NCBI RefSeq assembly: GCF_044704955.1
Contig: NC_091984.1
Coordinates: 144,832,001 to 144,896,000, forward strand
Length of the DNA: 64,000 bases
Reading direction: 5' to 3'
Origin: Pristiophorus japonicus
Lineage: Eukaryota
How positions within the stretch are numbered: the first letter of the stretch is position 1; each line of letters starts with the position of its first letter. The position numbers were made by a program, and so were the translations under genes. The notes under the pieces were generated by a model. That model did not search any database and was not told the origin of the DNA. It worked only from the letters and a program-made list of their open reading frames with translations. This document shows, in pieces, positions 10,870-47,385 of the stretch.

Positions 10870-11026
10870 TGTGTCAGGGACAGTCCGGGGGAGACACAAC
10901 TTTAAATAGAACAGGGGGTGAGCCGGGAGGCCAAAGGTCATTGTCAGCACTGCATTTCTACTCTCCTCCATCTCGGGACTGGGTCAGGGAAAGCATCTGA
11001 GGGTCAGGGGGTAAGGCACATTATTG

Positions 11027-11101
11027 GGACAGTGTGGAGGGAGCTTTACTCTGTATCTAACCCGTGCTGTACCTGCCCTGGGAGGGTTTGATGGGACAGT
11101 G
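11027..11101 (+). repeat. Single unit of a common shark minisatellite in the light-chain 3' UTR
   Basis: GGGACAGTGTGGAGGGAGCTTTACTCTGTATCTAACCCGTGCTGTACCTGCCCTGGGAGGGTTTGATGGGACAGTGT, bounded by repeated GGGACAGTGT. Confidence 0.55.
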
Positions 11102-11392
11102 TTGACTCGTGCTGCCAAGTAAAACCTCTCGAAGATGCTGAAGACTGTCAGCAGAGTAAAACTAATGTTAAACTGCAAAGTGCCGCTTCAGTAAGCAGAC
11201 CCCCTCCCTGCTCACCCTGCTGTTACAATTTAAGGTTTTGTCCCCGTTTAAAGGGACAGGATTCTCACGGTGTGGAGAAAACACCCACAACTGTTTTAAT
11301 GAAGCTGCATTCTCTCTGTGAGTGTCTCCAGCTCGCTCTCGCTGGGCTGTTTATTCAAGTCTTGTTTCTGTAAATGTGAATCTGTAAAAGGC

Positions 11393-11894: not shown

Positions 11895-11987
11895 TTCGTG
11901 TAGCTTACCCAGCAATGCCTGTAGGTGTGGTGTGTGTGTGTGTCTGACTGTTACCCAGCACCGCCTGTCGGTGTGTGTGTGTGACAG
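11895..11987 (+). repeat. (GT)n-GACTGTTACCCAGCACCGCCTGTAG minisatellite, left half (right half 18511-18592)
   Basis: The same unit occurs on both sides of the 11988-18513 array, so the array interrupts it. Confidence 0.85.
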
Positions 11988-12325
11988 TTTTTTTTTTTGT
12001 TTTTGTTTTTGTTTTTGTATTCGTTGCCAATCTTTCCAATTCTTTGTCAAATCACAAACGCCAGAGGTCACCTTGCACACATCAAGGATCACTCTGCGCC
12101 AATGCTCTTAGCCAAAAGGCCTATAGCCACTGCACCGTTCCTGGAAGTACTGCAATACCAGGTTCGTGCCATGGAGGTGGATGGGTCAAACCACCCCACC
12201 CACCTCTTATTTCCAAAAAGCATAGGAGAACCACCTTCCTGATCCAGGGAGAACCACGTTGGGGTCATGGTTACTCCCCTGTCAGGTCAGCTACGCATGA
12301 TCTTAGCCAAAAGGCCGAGAAGCGA
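11988..12325 (-). mobile_element. U2/U1 snRNA-derived chimeric SINE, copy 1 (full length)
   Basis: Minus strand in order: TCGCTTCTCGGCCTTTTGGCTAAGATCA (U2 5'); CTGACCTGACAGGGGAGTAACCATGA..GTGGTTCTCCC (U1 5'/SL I); TTTTTGG..CCTGGTATTGCAGTACTTCCAGGAACGGTGCA (U2 3'); GGCCTTTTGGCTAAGA; unique tail; (CAAAAA)n/poly(A). Confidence 0.88.
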
Positions 12326-12756
12326 CAGTTTTTTTTAAATTTCAAAATATACTTTATTCATAAAAGGAATCTGTACAGTACATTCAATGGCATTTCATTA
12401 CATTTCGCTGCGGTCAGCAATCCCATACAATACATCTGGGTGCTGACAGCAGTTGCGTTCGTTACATTTCTCGTTTTTCTGTTCAACTGCGATTCAGTAC
12501 AATAAACAGGGTACATTGTGGTACATTTACTCAAATTACATTTCATGTGTTACAATACAGAGCCCGAAATGGGTGACGGTACATTTACATTTTGTCTTAT
12601 CAAACATGCATTTCATAACACACCTTGCATTGTACATGGCACGACATTGGTGTTTACAGATTTGGTGCTCTATGTACACAAAGTGTAAATTACAAATACC
12701 GCCCGAGGGAGGTTTGTACTGATTTCTGCCCCCGGGTTTTCCGTGGCAGAAGGGCT

Positions 12757-15700
12757 TTAGACTGTGGCCCTACCCCACCGTGCCTTTGCGGCGACTGCAT
12801 CAATTTTCAGTGCGTCCCTCAGCACATATTCCTGGATCTTGGATTGCGCCAGTCTGCAACATGCGGACGTGGTCATCTCCTTGTTCTGGAAGACCAGCAA
12901 GTTTCGGCAAGACCAAAGAGCGTCTTTGACCGAGTTGATGGCCCTCCAGCAGCAGGTGATGTCTGTCTCGGTGTGTGTCCCTGGGAACAGCCCGTAGAGC
13001 ACAGAGTCCTGTGTTACGGAGCTGCTTGGGATGAACCTCGACAGCAACCACTGCATCTCTTTCCAGACCTGCGTTGCAAAGGCGCAATCCTGAAGGAGAT
13101 GGGCGACAGTCTCGTCCGCCCCGCAGCCGGCCCGGGGGCACCGTGCCATGCTGCTGAGGCGTCGGCTGTGCATGAACACTCTGACGGGTAGGGCCCCCCT
13201 CACCGCCAACCAAGCTACGTCTTGGTGCTTGTGTGTGAGCTTTGGCGATGAGACGTTCTGGCAAACAAGTTCGACAGTCCGCTCAGGGAACCACCTGACA
13301 GGGTCCACCGTCTCCTTCTTTCGGAGGGCGTCCAGGACCTTACGTGCTGACCACTGTTTGATGGCCTTGTGGTCAAAGGGGTTTCTTTTGAAGAACTTTT
13401 CCACGAAGGACAGGTGGACAGGCATGGTCCAACTGGTGGGGGCGTTTCGCGGCAGCGTGGCCAGACCCATCCTTCTCAACAATGGGGACAGGTAGAACCT
13501 CAGCACGTAGTGACACTTGGTGTTTGCGTACTGGGGGGCTGTGCATAGCTTGATGCAGCCGCACACAAAGGTGGCCATCAGGATGAGGGCCACGTTCGGA
13601 ACGTCCTTTCCTCCACTGTCCAGAGATTTGTACATCGTGTCTCAGCGGACACGGTCCATTTTGGATCTCCAGACAAAGTGGAAGACGGCTCGGGTGACTG
13701 CCGCGGCGCTGCAGCGTGAGATGGGCCAGACCTGCGCCACGTACAACAACACCGAGAGCACCTCGCTCTTGATGACCAGGTTCTTGCCTGTGATGGAAAG
13801 GGAGCGCTGCTCCCAAAATGACAGTTTCTGTCTGACCTTGGCAATGCGCTCGTCCCAGTTTTTGGCGCACGCCCCGTCCGCTCCGAATCATATTCCCAGC
13901 ACCTTCAGGAAATCTGGCTTGACGGTGAAGGGAATGGAGGCTCGGTCGGTCCAGTGACCAAAGAGCATGGCCTCGCTTTTGGTGCGGTTGACCTTTGCTC
14001 CCGAGGCCAGTTCAAACTGGTCGCAGATTGCGAGCAATCTGCGGACCGACTGCGGGTCCGAGCAAAAGACGGCGACGTCGTCCATGTACAGCGAGGTTTT
14101 GACCTGGGCGCCTCCGCTGCCTGGGATCGTCACCCCTCTGATGCCCGCATCCTTCCTGATGGACTCGGCAAAGGGCTCGATACAACACACAAACAAGACA
14201 GACGAGAGAGGACAGCCTTGCCTGACTCCAGATCTGATTGGAAAGCTTTGAGTTTCCCACCCGTTGATTAGAACTGCACTACTGATGTCTGTGTCGAGCA
14301 GTTTGACCCAATTTCGGATGCCCTCCCCGAACCCCATTTTGGAGAGCACGTCCATCAGGTACGTGTGCGATATCCTGTCAAAGGCTTTCTCCTGGTCTAA
14401 GCTGATTAAACAGGTGTTCACCCTCCTGTCCCGCATGTAGGCGATCGTATCTCTGAGTAGCGCGAGGCTATCAGAGATCTTCCTGCCGGGGACAGCGCAG
14501 GTCTGGTCCTGGTGAATCACCAGCTCAAGGGCAGACTTGACCCTGTTGGCGATGACCTTCGACAGGATCTTGTAGTCCACATTGAGCAGCGAAATGGGCC
14601 GCCAGTTTTTGATTTCCTCCCTCTCCCCCTTTCCTCATCGATTCTGACATGCTGCCGGCCAGAAGCATACCTCCGTACACTTCCAGCAGGTCTGGGCCTA
14701 TCCAGTCCCACAGAGCCGAGTACAACTCGACCGGTAAGCCATCGCTTCCGGGAGTTTTATTCGTCTCGAAGGACCGGACGGCCTTTGTCAGCTCGTCCAG
14801 AGTTAGCGGGTGGTCCAGACTCTCTCGCTTGCCGTCGTCTAAGACCTCCGAAATAGATGACAGGAAAGACTGGGAGGCCGCACGGTCTGTGGGCTTGACG
14901 TCGTACAGCCTGGCATAGAAGGATTTGCTGATCCTCTGCATGGCAGGCTGCGAAGACGTCACAGAACCGTCTTCTTCCTTTAGGCTGGTGATCACAGAGC
15001 TCCCCCTGTGTACCTTTTGGAAGAAGAAACGCGAACACGTCTCATCCTGCTCGACGGAGCGGACTCTGGATCGGAAGATGATCTTGGAGGACTCCGAGGC
15101 AAAGAGCGAGGCTTGCTGGCCCTTCACCTCTTCGAGTTCCTCCACAACATCGACCCCCATCGACTGCAGCAGGAGCAGGTTTTGCATATTTGTCTGGAGT
15201 CGGGACAATTCCCTCTGTCTCCCTCTCGCCTCCTGAACACCTTTGAGGATGAAGAACCTCTTGATGTTCGTCTTGATTGTTTCCCACCAGTGAATCGGGG
15301 AATCGCAGAGGGGTTTTACGGTTCTCCAACCGTTGTAATCCCTCTTGAGTTCCTCAATGTTTTCCGGAGTCAACAGTTTCACGTTCAGCTTCCATATCCC
15401 TCTGCCAACTTTCTGGTTGTCCTGTGGGTGACAGTCAGCCAGTAGGAGGCAGTGGTCAGAGAAGAACACCGGCGTGATGTCGGTGGATCTGACCTTGAGC
15501 GTGTGGGACACAAACAGGAAGTCAATTCTGGAACGGACGGACCCGTCTGGTCTCGACCAGGTGTATCTGCGCGGTGCTCCGTCTGCAGGGTTGCTGAAGA
15601 CGTCGCACAGCTTGGCATCTTTTACCGTATCCATCAGGAGTTTGGACGTGGCGTCCAGTTTGCTGTCGGCTCTGCTGGATCGTCCAGCCGCATCGATGAT

Positions 15701-16135
15701 GCAGTTGAAGTCACCACCCAGAATGACCGGCCTGGACGTTGCCAGTAACAGTGGGAGCTGCTGGAAGAGGGCCAGCCTCTCGTTCTTCACAGCTGGAGCG
15801 TAAACATTAATTAACCTGAGAGGGGAGTTTTTGTACATTACATCTGCTACGAGGAGGCGGCCGCCCACCACCTCCTTAACTTCGGTGATGGTGAAGTGGC
15901 CTCCCCGCAGCAGAATGCCCAAGCCGGAAGCTCGGCTGTCGTTGCCCCCTGACCAAATGGATGGTCCATGGGTCCACCATCGTGACCACTGCCGGTAACT
16001 GCTGAAGTGCGGCAGGCCGCACTCCTGCAAGAACAGCAGGTCCGCTTTGACCTTGGCGAGGTACCCCAAGGTGGAAACACATCGCGTAGTCGATTTCACG
16101 CTACGCACGTTAATACTAGCAATTTTTAAATCCAT
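12757..16135 (-). pseudogene. Tx1 ORF2 (APE endonuclease - RT - C-terminal zinc finger), disrupted
   Basis: ASINVRS, FLQEC, GGDFNC, SRIDF, FSDH (APE); LDQEKAFD, GVRQGCPLS, YMDD (RT); CPRAGC..ETVAHLLQDC. Frameshifting deletion at ~14625 and TGA stops at 13888-13890 and 13642-13644. Confidence 0.92.
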
Positions 16136-16155
16136 TTTTAAGCTATGTTTTACAT

Positions 16156-17644
16156 TTACATACATTGCAGTTCAGATACATCGTTTTCAATTTCAGATAA
16201 ATTGTTGTCAATTTCCCCATATTCCACAATGGCGATTTCCAGCATGTGTAAGTTATTACTATCCACATCAAGTTGAACATTTACTGCCCCTGGGGTGGCG
16301 TGGTCATCATCGTCCTCTGTTGTGGGGATGTTTTGACCAGGGGACTGCTGCAGTTCTGTGATTAAGTCCTCAATGTTCTCTGCACTGTCCTCGCCTGGTG
16401 TTGGTGGTTCCCCCTTTTCCTCAGTCGCGGCGGTGTCGAGCTGGTGTGCGTCGATCGCTGCGTCGCTCCCGGTGTTCCGGAGGTGGGGTGTGCTGGGCAC
16501 TTCGCTGCTCTCGTTATCCCGGGCTGGTCTGCGTTGGTTGCTCCTTCGCTGGGTCCTTCGTTGCTCTCAGGTTCCTGGGGCAGGGCTGTGTTGGTCGCTT
16601 CCCTGCTCCTGGTTTTCTGTGGCCGTGGGATGGCGCATTGCCTCTTCTTCAGGCGGTGGCACTTTTCCTCATCAGACAAGCTGCCGTCGCTGGTTTCTGC
16701 CGAGCTTGGTGGTCGCCTCTTGGCCTTGCGCCTTTTCCTTACTGTCTGCCATTCTGCTTCCTCGTCTGATGTCAGCTCATCTCTGGGTTCGGTGCTCTGG
16801 GGTCCTCGCCGTCTTGTCCCGAGTTCATGGTTGGGGGGAGGGTGTGGCTCTCCTCTGGAGCGTTGTGTCCGTCAGCTTCCTCCTCCTCTGGTGCAAAGTT
16901 CTTTGCTGCCTGCGCATAGCTGCGATTGCGTTTGGGGCAGTTTTTGTAAAGGTGCCCAGCCAGACCACAGAGGTTGCAGCACTTGGTCTCCTTGCAGTCT
17001 TTTGACTGGTGGCCCTCGTTCTTGCAGTTTCGGCAGATGACAGTCTTGCAGCTTGCCGCCACATGGCCTGCCTTCCCGCAGGTGCGGCACACGTTGGGTT
17101 GGCCAGCGTACACCATGTAGCCCCGGCTTCCTCCGATGGAAAAGCTGGAGGGGGGGTGCAGGATGGTTCCGCTGGCGTCCACCTTCAAGGTGACCTGGAT
17201 CTGGCGCTTGCTAGTCCATATTCCGTGCCCGTCTTTCACGTCACTGCTGCTTCCTGCCCCATCGAAAAACCTGTTGAGGAAAGTCAGCACATCGATGACG
17301 GGGATGTGGGGGTCGAACATTTGCACTGTGATAGTGCGTCTTCTCTGCGACGGGAGGGTGAACAGCGGCTCCCAAGTTAGCACTGAGCGCACCGGTTCAC
17401 TCGCCTCCTTCAAACCCTTCAGGAACTTCAGGCAGAGGGTGACGGTTCTGAAGGTCACATCGAAGTAACCTCTCTTCGGGAGGTCCTGCAAGGCGAAGAC
17501 GTCGGCGACTTTCATGCCACATGTTCCCAGCAGGATTTTCTTCACGAAAAGTTCCCGGTTGATCATTGTCTGTCCTTCCACTTTCTTTACCGTCACTCGG
17601 ATGGTGTTTCGGACTCCCTGGTTCGCCGCTCGGTTGGCCGCCAT
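16156..17644 (-). pseudogene. Tx1 ORF1 (ZCCHC3-like N-terminus, three CCHC knuckles, acidic low-complexity tail), frameshifted
   Basis: MAANRAANQGVRNTIRV..YFDVTF; CRTCGKAGHVAASC, CRNCKNEGHQSKDC, CNLCGLAGHLYKNC. The natural frame continues DELTSDEEAEWQTVRKRRK after a frameshift near 16800. Confidence 0.85.
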
Positions 17645-17896
17645 CCGGGTTGCAGATTCCTCCTTTCGCTGTGAGTTTTGGCCAAAGCCTTCAACCTGGC
17701 GTTGCCCCAGTCCGGGGCACGGGCGGACCTCCAGGCCCACCCCTTGACAGGCCCAAAGGCCCGTCGAATCGTCAGTCGACATGCAGATTTTGTCTCCTCT
17801 CTCCAATTGGCGCCTGGCTCAAGCCAAAGGCCAGAGCCAGCAAAACTGGAAAAACGAGTTTCTGCAGTCAGTCGATTTGCATATGAATGCCCAATC

Positions 17897-17939
17897 AACA
17901 GGTACTACACTTGATCTTAGCCAAAAGGCCGAGAAGCGA
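17897..17939 (-). ncRNA. U2 snRNA 5' fragment (nt ~2-44) forming the head of the Tx1 element; not a complete gene
   Basis: TCGCTTCTCGGCCTTTTGGCTAAGATCAAGTGTAGTACCTGTT differs at one position from vertebrate U2 as recalled, and includes the GTAGTA branch-point recognition sequence. Confidence 0.9.
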
Positions 17940-17942
17940 CAG

Positions 17943-18240
17943 TTTTTAAAAAAAAATTATTTATTCGTTGCCAATCTTTCCAATTCTTTGTCAAATCACA
18001 AACGCCAGAGCTCACCCTGCACCTGTCAAGGATCACTCTGCGCCAATGCTCTTAGCCAAAAGGCCTAGAGCCACTGCACTGTTCCTGGAAGGACTGCAAT
18101 ACCAGGTTCGTGCCATGGAGGTGGATGGGTCAAGCCACCCCACCCACCTCCTATTTCCAAAAAAGCAAGCATATACCTTCCTGATCCAGGGAGAACCACT
18201 TTGGGGTCATGGTTACTCCCCTGTCAGGTCAGTTACGCAT
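17943..18240 (-). mobile_element. U2/U1 chimeric SINE, copy 2 (lacks first ~27 nt)
   Basis: Colinear with copy 1 from ATGCGTAACTGACCTGAC to the A-rich tail. Confidence 0.88.
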
Positions 18241-18513
18241 TTTTTTTTTTTTTAATTTTTTTTTTTGAAATTCGTAGCCAATCGTTCCAATTCTTTGTCA
18301 AATCACAAACGCCAGAGGTCACCTTGCACACGCCAAGGATCACTCTGCGCCAATGCTCCTAGCCAAAAGGCCTAGAGCCACTGCACCGTTCCTGGAAGTA
18401 CTGCAATACCAGGTTCGTGCCATGGAGGTGGATGGGTCAGGTCCCCCACACACCTCCGTGGAGATGGATGGGTCAAGCCACCCCACCAGGTCAGTTACGC
18501 ATGATCTTAGCCA
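18241..18513 (-). mobile_element. U2/U1 chimeric SINE, copy 3 (U1 part largely deleted, internal duplication)
   Basis: Starts TGGCTAAGATCATGCGTAACTGACCTGG and jumps to the U2 3' half; GGAG(G/A)TGGATGGGTCA duplicated; long poly(A). Confidence 0.85.
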
Positions 18514-46557: not shown

Positions 46558-46592
<35 letters not shown>

Positions 46593-46928
46593 TCATGTCC
46601 AATCGTTATCCAATCGTTACAATTCTTTGTCAAACGCCAGAGGTCACCCTGCACCAGTCAAGGATCACTCTGCACCAATGCTCTTAGCCAAAAGGCCTAG
46701 AGCCACTGCAGCGTTCCTGGAAGTACTGCAATACCAGGTTCGTGCCATGGAGGTGGATGGGTCAGGTCCCCCACACACCTCCGTGGAGGTGGATGGGTCA
46801 CCAATCCCACCCACCTCCTGTTTACAAAAATGTAAGCATATACCTTCCTGACCAGGGAGGAACCACCCGGACGTCATGGTGGCTGGTCAGGTTAGTTATG
46901 CAGATCTTAGCCAAAAGGCCGAGAAGCG
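46558..46928 (-). mobile_element. U2/U1 chimeric SINE, copy 4 (divergent variant) with TSD
   Basis: Same modular order, ~30-nt poly(A), flanking direct repeat TGTTCTAAT (46550-46558 / 46929-46937); inserted in an L2-type tail. Confidence 0.9.
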
Positions 46929-47385
46929 TGTTCTAATGTTCCAGTTTCTATAGCATTGTCGGTTGTACCTGGCAACAGAACGTCTCTGTGTGGATATACC
47001 CCATGCACCGAGCTCCACGGTGAGGCCTCCCACATTGGAATGGCCAGCCGATGCTCGCTGCAGTGCGGAGTAGCTGCTGAACTGCCAATCAGTCTGAGAC
47101 ACCGCCTCACGAGCGGACGAGGAGATACACGCTGAGATCCACCATCAAATGACACGTGGGGAACTGGAAATGATTCTGCAAATCTGACTGGAGGTTTGGT
47201 CCAAACGGGTTTTACAAACCAATCAATTGAGTGACACAGAAATTGTCAAAAAATGTGGTCTTTTCAGAACCAACATCGCCCCCTTTTGGTATTAAGACAG
47301 CACTGTCAATTTCCCTCACAATTTGACTGAGCTGCAATTTTCAATGTCTCCTCACGTGGCTCGTTGTCAATCTTTATTTTATAAC

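What the first reader, a model, noticed from the sequence alone, without database searches (positions are those of the whole stretch)
12329..17939. Tx1-clade LINE carrying a U2 snRNA head outside any U2 gene: candidate autonomous partner
Seen: the element's first 43 nt are near-perfect U2 (through GTGTAGTA and CTGTT), closer to true U2 than the SINE heads are. Its 3' flank is not the remainder of U2, and the upstream sequence is another SINE tail, not an snRNA promoter region. Established: Keno elements (Tx1 clade) insert specifically into U2 genes ~37 nt from the 5' end. Inference: a Keno-like lineage kept the co-transcribed U2 leader as its own 5' end and now moves itself and the U2-headed SINE elsewhere. 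The SINE tail does not resemble the LINE 3' UTR, implying poly(A)-type recognition and/or recognition through the shared head.
Basis: partly seen in the sequence, partly recalled or inferred. Interest (0 to 1): 0.85.

Follow-up and report, generated by a model that had tools for sequence, protein, structure and literature searches.

The report
Shark LINE with U2 snRNA head
A nearly intact 5.6-kb jumping gene of the L1/Tx1 type in a shark genome starts with the first 44 letters of the spliceosomal U2 RNA and sits head-to-tail with short U2/U1-derived elements. This design is published for crocodilians, and I found no report of it in cartilaginous fishes.

Summary
On the minus strand, 17940..12329 is one full-length LINE. 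It has a U2 head (U2 nt 1-44, 42/44 identical, identity collapses after nt 44), an intact ORF1 and a lightly damaged ORF2. ORF2 has one frameshift and two in-frame TGA codons. An AATAAA signal and an A8 tail close the element. It lies outside any U2 gene: the tail of an snRNA-mosaic SINE is upstream and a full SINE copy is downstream.

LINE and SINEs therefore used one nick site.

The RT falls in a vertebrate L1/Tx1-type clade. Keno membership could not be tested, because no Keno reference sequence was available. No second copy could be fetched, so I could not show that the head belongs to the whole family.

The design itself is already published for crocodilians: Tx1-Mar LINEs with U1/U2 heads plus SINEU (Kojima 2015). 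This is a new member of a known kind in a new vertebrate class. The scan noted the SINE family on other DNA of this genome; it noted the U2-headed LINE only here.

The parts
17897..17940 (-). U2 snRNA-derived head of the LINE. U2 nt n corresponds to window 17941-n. A1 reads G and U39 reads C.
   Evidence: Rfam U2 alignment. 42/44 identity to the U2 gene of L016, with identity collapsing after nt 44.
17645..17896 (-). LINE-specific 5' UTR. It holds ATTGG at 17895-17891, an octamer ATGCAAAT at 17882-17875 and CCAAT at 17810-17806. These are candidate internal pol II promoter motifs (inference only).
   Evidence: Sequence and motif positions. No significant likeness to the SINE body.
16772..17644 (-). 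ORF1, intact, 290 aa from the ATG: two ZCCHC3-type RNA-binding domains and CCHC zinc knuckles.
   Evidence: Pfam PF23057, PF23058 and PF00098. Shark homologues at 56-81% identity. ATG and stop positions.
12757..16135 (-). ORF2 (APE endonuclease, reverse transcriptase, zf-RVT). It is broken by one frameshift within 14637-14567 and by in-frame TGA codons at 13890-13888 and 13644-13642. The natural stop is TAA at 12759-12757. An upstream ATG at 16165 is an alternative start.
   Evidence: Pfam. tblastn of P0208, P0166, P0009 and P0316 gives two frames only. Stop positions.
12337..12756 (-). 3' UTR, with the polyadenylation signal AATAAA at 12358-12353.
12329..12336 (-). Poly(A) tail, A8.
17939..17942 (-). 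CTGT between the poly(A) of SINE B and the LINE head. This is copy 1 of the recurring 4-nt junction, read as a target-site duplication. Its GT overlaps U2 nt 1-2.
12325..12328 (-). CTGT between the LINE poly(A) and SINE C (copy 2).
11984..11987 (-). CTGT between the SINE C poly(A) and the (CA)n-rich flank (copy 3, the native target).
11988..12326 (-). SINE C, a full-length U2/U1-mosaic, poly(A)-tailed SINE immediately 3' of the LINE.
   Evidence: Rfam U2 63.5 bits. Alignment of the four copies.
17943..18239 (-). Main part of SINE B, immediately 5' of the LINE. Its 5' stub is at 18510-18502.
18240..18486 (-). SINE A, 5'-truncated, of the subfamily with a 35-nt insert. It is nested in the head of SINE B with a 15-nt target duplication TGCGTAACTGACCTG (18501-18487 and 18239-18225).

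Best explanation
This is a full-length, recently inactivated copy of a poly(A)-type L1/Tx1-group LINE family of sharks whose RNA begins with a U2 snRNA-derived leader (U2 nt 1-44).

It was inserted by target-primed reverse transcription at a nick between A and CTGT, in a (CA)n-rich repeat. snRNA-mosaic SINE copies (SINEU-like) were inserted at the same nick, before or after it. Each event duplicated CTGT, which regenerated the site and built a head-to-tail stack. One enzyme, most simply the LINE's own ORF2 protein, therefore served both LINE and SINE, recognising their poly(A) ends and not a shared tail.

The locus is the shark counterpart of the crocodilian Tx1-Mar/SINEU pair.

Shown here: the anatomy, the head, the shared junction, and the type of enzyme.

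Inferred:
- that the head is a family feature;
- that the LINE drives the SINE;
- the origin of the head. I put a leader co-transcribed from a U2-gene-resident ancestor at about 40% and template switching to U2 snRNA at about 45%.
For: - Domain make-up of ORF1 and ORF2. The best solved relative is L1 ORF2p.
- Damage is limited to one frameshift and two TGA codons in ORF2, and ORF1 is intact. AATAAA plus A8 close the element.
- The head is 42/44 identical to U2 and stops abruptly at nt 44. Nt 30-44 differ from every SINE copy in the window, so they came with the LINE RNA.
- CTGT follows three successive poly(A) tails. SINE B and SINE C are only about 91% alike, and SINE A belongs to another subfamily. 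These are therefore separate insertions and not a segmental duplication.
- The solo SINE copy at 46930..46560 has its own 9-bp duplication, so the SINE is mobile.
- The family has other copies: P0316 is 83% identical in the RT and 77-80% over ORF2. Whale shark and bamboo shark fragments are 60-81% identical. A second species holds 21% of the stretch's 31-mers.
- Precedent: Tx1-Mar LINEs with U1/U2 heads, SINEU, and tandem insertions sandwiching a duplication (PMC4494074).
Against: - Only one LINE copy could be examined, so a head acquired in this single event is not excluded.
- There is one shared site at one locus (n=1).
- Other Tx1 families exist in this genome (earlier notes, unchecked) and could drive the SINE.
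- There is no sequence link between LINE and SINE beyond 27-29 nt of universally conserved U2.
- The 36-nt identical junction cannot separate a 4-nt duplication from a long, homology-mediated join.
Confidence: 0.55

Rival explanations
1. One-off chimera. The family normally has no U2 head. During this one insertion the reverse transcriptase reached the 5' end of the LINE RNA and switched to U2 snRNA at about nt 44, as in U6/L1 chimeric retrocopies.
For: The SINE body is itself a U2-U1-U2 mosaic, so this machinery switches onto snRNAs. Kojima 2015 favours template switching for such heads. Only one copy was seen.
Against: The LINE is full length with its UTR, whereas such chimeras usually join 5'-truncated LINEs (my own knowledge). 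In crocodilians the heads are family-level features. The SINE family of this genome carries a U2 head of similar extent in every full copy.
Confidence: 0.2
2. The U2-headed LINE is a real family but it is not the SINE's driver. The SINE is moved by another poly(A)-type LINE of this genome, for example the CR1-targeting Tx1 family or an L1. The common head only reflects independent capture of U2.
For: There is no tail or body likeness. The shared 27 nt are invariant U2 sequence. Earlier notes, which I did not check, report another stacking Tx1 family and SINE copies inside CR1.
Against: LINE and SINEs used the same A|CTGT nick at this locus. The crocodilian precedent has the same pairing.
Confidence: 0.2
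3. The head belongs to the target. A headless LINE landed inside a pre-existing U2 retro-pseudogene or U2-headed element at about nt 44, Keno-style.
For: The head ends 6 nt past the Keno nick (PMC4640811, PMC6136364). Keno-type junctions in L004 and L012 lie at nt 41 and nt 36.
Against: The remainder of that element (U2 nt 39 or 45 onward) is absent. The 3' flank is CTGT plus a SINE from nt 1-3, so a target deletion would have to be assumed.
Confidence: 0.05

Closest known systems
Tx1-Mar LINEs with snRNA heads (e.g. Tx1-11_Crp, U2 head) and their SINEU partners in crocodilians (Kojima 2015, PMC4494074)
   Same: A Tx1-type LINE whose 5' end is U2-derived. Co-resident poly(A)-tailed SINEs built from U1/U2 pieces. 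No tail likeness between SINE and LINE. Tandem insertions that sandwich a target duplication.
   Different: The host is a cartilaginous fish. No Mariner target is seen here; the sites are a (CA)n repeat, a SINE head and unique DNA. The SINE is a U2-U1-U2 mosaic with an extra tail. Kinship to Tx1-Mar was not tested.
Keno, the U2 snRNA gene-specific Tx1 family (Kojima and Fujiwara 2004, as cited in PMC4640811 and PMC6136364)
   Same: APE-type Tx1-like LINE linked to U2. The head ends within 6 nt of Keno's cut at nt 38|39, as expected for a co-transcribed 5' target flank plus a short duplication.
   Different: This copy is not in a U2 gene and has no U2 nt 39 onward at its 3' side. The SINE sites show no U2 specificity. 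RT kinship to Keno is unknown.
U6/L1 and other snRNA-L1 chimeric retrocopies made by template switching (Buzdin 2002 and Garcia-Perez 2007, as cited in PMC4494074)
   Same: An snRNA 5' part fused upstream of a LINE sequence within one retrotransposition unit.
   Different: Those are single events, mostly with a whole snRNA and a 5'-truncated L1. Here a 44-nt U2 piece sits on a full-length element.
Metagenome Tx1-like LINEs in snRNA genes found here (L004 and L012 in U2; L016, L037 and L039 in U1)
   Same: The LINE begins with the first 18-41 nt of the snRNA. In the U1 family the 3' flank restarts at snRNA nt 1-3, like the SINE head that follows the shark LINE.
   Different: They sit in genuine snRNA genes of invertebrate-like hosts and fall in a different RT group.

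Membership tests
L1/Tx1-group non-LTR retrotransposon | ORF2 with an N-terminal APE-type endonuclease, an RT, and a C-terminal zinc-binding domain | tested here: met
   PF03372/PF14529, PF00078 and PF13966. The best PDB relative is L1 ORF2p at 124 bits.
L1/Tx1-group non-LTR retrotransposon | ORF1 RNA-binding protein, here with CCHC knuckles as in Tx1-type elements | tested here: met
   PF23057, PF23058 and PF00098. That this ORF1 type marks Tx1 and not L1 rests on my own knowledge.
L1/Tx1-group non-LTR retrotransposon | Poly(A) 3' end and target-site duplication | tested here: met
   AATAAA plus A8, with CTGT on both sides.
Tx1 clade (Repbase sense) | RT groups with reference Tx1 families to the exclusion of L1 | tested here: inconclusive
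   It sits in a starred 18-row vertebrate clade with Takifugu BAD04856, a Kojima and Fujiwara deposit that is probably KibiFr1. No labelled L1, Tx1L, Keno or Tx1-Mar rows were available.
Keno | Inserted in U2 snRNA genes at nt 38|39, with U2 sequence on both sides | tested here: not met
   The 5' flank is a SINE tail. The 3' flank is CTGT plus a SINE from nt 1-3.
Keno | RT clusters with Keno references | not testable with these tools
   No Keno sequence is held. The U2-gene LINEs from metagenomes (L004, L012) fall outside its clade, but whether those are Keno is unknown.
snRNA-headed Tx1 (Tx1-Mar type) | U1/U2-derived sequence at the 5' end of the family consensus | tested here: inconclusive
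   Met for this copy.
snRNA-headed Tx1 (Tx1-Mar type) | Target preference shared with the snRNA-headed SINE | tested here: inconclusive
   The same A|CTGT nick was used by the LINE and by SINEs at one locus. The other SINE sites differ.

The most novel reading that the evidence does not exclude
A Keno-derived Tx1 lineage escaped from U2 genes in cartilaginous fishes. It kept the U2 leader (nt 1-44: the target flank plus a 6-nt duplication) that it once received by co-transcription. The snRNA heads of its SINE partners arose in the same way. If so, snRNA-headed LINE/SINE pairs would be relics of site-specific ancestors and not products of template switching. The pairing would then be either more than 400 million years old or repeatedly reinvented.
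Probability: 0.3. Interest if true: 0.65.

Novelty: new member of a known kind. Interest (0 to 1): 0.42.

Why it matters
snRNA-headed SINEs (SINEU) and their Tx1 partners are published only for crocodilians. How they are transcribed and how the heads arise are open questions. A young, almost intact U2-headed LINE next to its presumed SINEs in a shark extends the system to a distant vertebrate class. It also offers a sharp head boundary (nt 44, next to the Keno cut) with which the two origin models can be tested genome-wide. It is an extension of known biology, not a new principle.

Tried and rejected
I worked beside them. Only local scripts read them.
- There is no second copy of the LINE in the window.
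- The scan of viral contigs with ORF2 was blank.
- I searched for antisense 5'-UTR ORFs of other copies, whose ends would have revealed the head junction. The search was blank.
- The findings search by sequence was blank.
- Likeness between the LINE UTRs and the SINE body is not significant: z is at most 2.6, and 13-109 of 500 shuffles reach the observed score. A second 'GGCCTTTGGCT' motif in the 5' UTR is no better than chance.
- Naming BAD04856: no paper gives its family. KibiFr1 is a guess from PMC6515669.
- I considered reading the 36-nt identical junction as a long target duplication. It cannot be told apart from a 4-nt duplication plus a common head.
- I rejected the idea that the stack formed in one event by serial template switching, because that does not explain CTGT at every junction.
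- I rejected CTGT as part of the RNAs (read-through of U2 nt 40-43), because SINE A and SINE D lack it.
Full report
**What is there.** The element lies on the minus strand. Read 5' to 3' it runs from 17940 to 12329. Its parts are:
- a 44-nt U2-derived head (17940-17897);
- a 252-nt specific 5' UTR;
- an intact ORF1 of 290 aa (17644-16772) with two ZCCHC3-type RNA-binding domains and CCHC knuckles;
- a 0.6-kb spacer;
- ORF2 (16135-12757) with APE endonuclease, reverse transcriptase and zf-RVT domains;
- a 3' UTR with AATAAA at 12358-12353;
- an A8 tail.

Protein-to-DNA alignments with four relatives show only two reading frames. ORF2 therefore carries one frameshift (within 14637-14567) and two in-frame TGA codons (13890-13888 and 13644-13642). 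The copy is dead but young.

**The head.** Rfam's U2 model reaches its gathering score at 17940..17766 (53.1 bits), but only model positions 1-45 align with confidence. It is 42/44 identical over nt 1-44 and 7/16 over nt 45-60. The SINE heads match U2 through nt 29 and loosely to nt 36, then continue as U1-like sequence. Nt 30-44 of the LINE head cannot have been copied from the adjoining SINEs.

**The surroundings.** The LINE is one unit of a head-to-tail stack in a (CA)n-rich repeat. On the minus strand the order is:
- SINE B, which is 5'-truncated and has a 5'-truncated SINE A nested in its head with a 15-nt duplication;
- poly(A), then CTGT;
- the LINE, then A8, then CTGT;
- SINE C, full length;
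- poly(A), then CTGT, then the flank.

The SINE copies differ from each other: B versus C is about 91%, and A and D belong to a subfamily with a 35-nt insert. They are therefore separate insertions. A solo copy at 46930..46560 has its own 9-bp duplication.

The simplest reading is repeated target-primed reverse transcription at one nick (A|CTGT), with a 4-nt duplication that regenerates the site each time. Kojima 2015 describes the same pattern for SINEU: tandem insertions sandwiching a target-site duplication. LINE and SINEs used the same nick, so one endonuclease probably served both.

But that flank is a U2-headed SINE starting at nt 1-3. With the A-run and CTGT, this gives 36 identical nt at both junctions. 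A longer, homology-mediated join cannot be excluded.

**Kinship.**
- The closest solved relative of the RT is L1 ORF2p.
- A whole-library HMMER search found many shark fragments at 60-81% identity. Those I looked up come from whale shark and bamboo shark. Full-length relatives were at 36-45%.
- P0316, from an ENA assembly, is 83% identical in the RT.
- In a careful RT tree the LINE and P0316 (support 100/99) are sister to a newt family (93/94). They sit inside a starred vertebrate clade that holds Takifugu BAD04856, a deposit of Kojima and Fujiwara that is probably KibiFr1.
- No labelled Keno, Tx1-Mar, Tx1L or L1 sequence was available. Clade membership beyond 'L1/Tx1 group' is therefore unproven.

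**Labelled snRNA-gene LINEs.** To obtain some, I scanned metagenome contigs with an RT alignment and ran Rfam on the 80 loci.
- L004 is U2 nt 1-41 followed by a LINE, in a genuine U2 gene.
- L012 is a LINE, then A14, then U2 from nt 36.
- Published Keno and Utopia 3' flanks start at nt 38/39 (PMC4640811; PMC6136364).

The shark head ends at nt 44. Three points weaken it. These invertebrate elements fall in another RT group. Nt 26-47 of U2 is, to my knowledge, single-stranded, so it may also be a favoured landing zone for template switching. The SINE body is a U2-U1-U2 mosaic, which fits template switching. I leave the origin of the head open.

**What is known.** Kojima 2015 (PMC4494074) reports crocodilian Tx1-Mar LINEs, which cluster with Keno. 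Some carry U1 or U2 heads nearly identical to those of SINEU. They share targets with SINEU and show no tail likeness. Full-text searches found SINEU reported only for crocodilians. The present locus is thus a new member of a known kind in a new vertebrate class.

**What I could not do.** The decisive test is whether other copies carry the head. It failed for lack of access:
- three indirect routes were blank.

One search shows the stretch in DNA runs of the source species and, at 21% of its words, in a second species.

Earlier notes of this scan, which I did not check, report the SINE family at other places in this genome. They also report another stacking Tx1 family that targets CR1, which is a possible alternative driver.

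Noticed in passing
L016 481-500 and 6094-6146; L037 5005-5150; L039 4751-4891: A Tx1-like LINE family sits in U1 snRNA genes. U1 nt 1-18 precede the LINE, and a short A-run plus U1 from nt 1-3 follow it, so the duplication is about 16-18 bp and the downstream U1 copy stays whole. PMC4640811 (2015) lists only a DNA transposon (Dada-U1) as U1-targeting, so this may be an unreported target for LINEs.
   Followed up: partly
L005 2067-2639; L045 5238-5355: Related LINEs are flanked on the same strand by U5 snRNA: two copies on the 5' side in L005 and one on the 3' side in L045. U5-targeting Tx1 families are mentioned in Kojima 2015, Fig. 3.
   Followed up: no
L004 15-55; L012 5247-5418: Keno-type insertions in genuine U2 genes of an invertebrate-like host. 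The 5' junction comes after U2 nt 41 and the 3' flank starts at nt 36. The two belong to different RT sub-groups.
   Followed up: partly
window 18501-18487 and 18239-18225 (minus strand): SINE A is nested in the head of SINE B with a perfect 15-nt duplication, TGCGTAACTGACCTG. What looks like an internally deleted SINE is really a 5'-truncated copy inside another copy.
   Followed up: yes
window 17895-17875 and 17810-17803 (minus strand): Directly after the U2 head the LINE 5' UTR holds ATTGG, a perfect octamer ATGCAAAT and a CCAAT/ATTGG pair. These are pol II promoter-type motifs that could form an internal promoter. This was not tested.
   Followed up: no
window 19060-18790 (minus strand): A fragment of a CR1/L2-like reverse transcriptase ORF lies about 250 nt upstream of the stack, followed by a C-rich stretch and the (CA)n repeat.
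   Followed up: no
L071 1-159; L074 1-244 and 10418-10838: LINE-bearing soil metagenome contigs are flanked by 18S rRNA gene pieces on the same strand. This suggests 18S-targeting elements in the outgroup clade.
   Followed up: no
P0208, P0303, P0306-P0310 (Pleurodeles waltl): The nearest non-shark family has many gene models with closely spaced locus tags on one newt chromosome. That hints at stacked or tandem insertions, but their DNA could not be read.
   Followed up: no
window 10926-11110 (minus strand): Weak Rfam match to uc_338/TUC338 (31 bits, far below the gathering score of 120). Probably chance.
   Followed up: no
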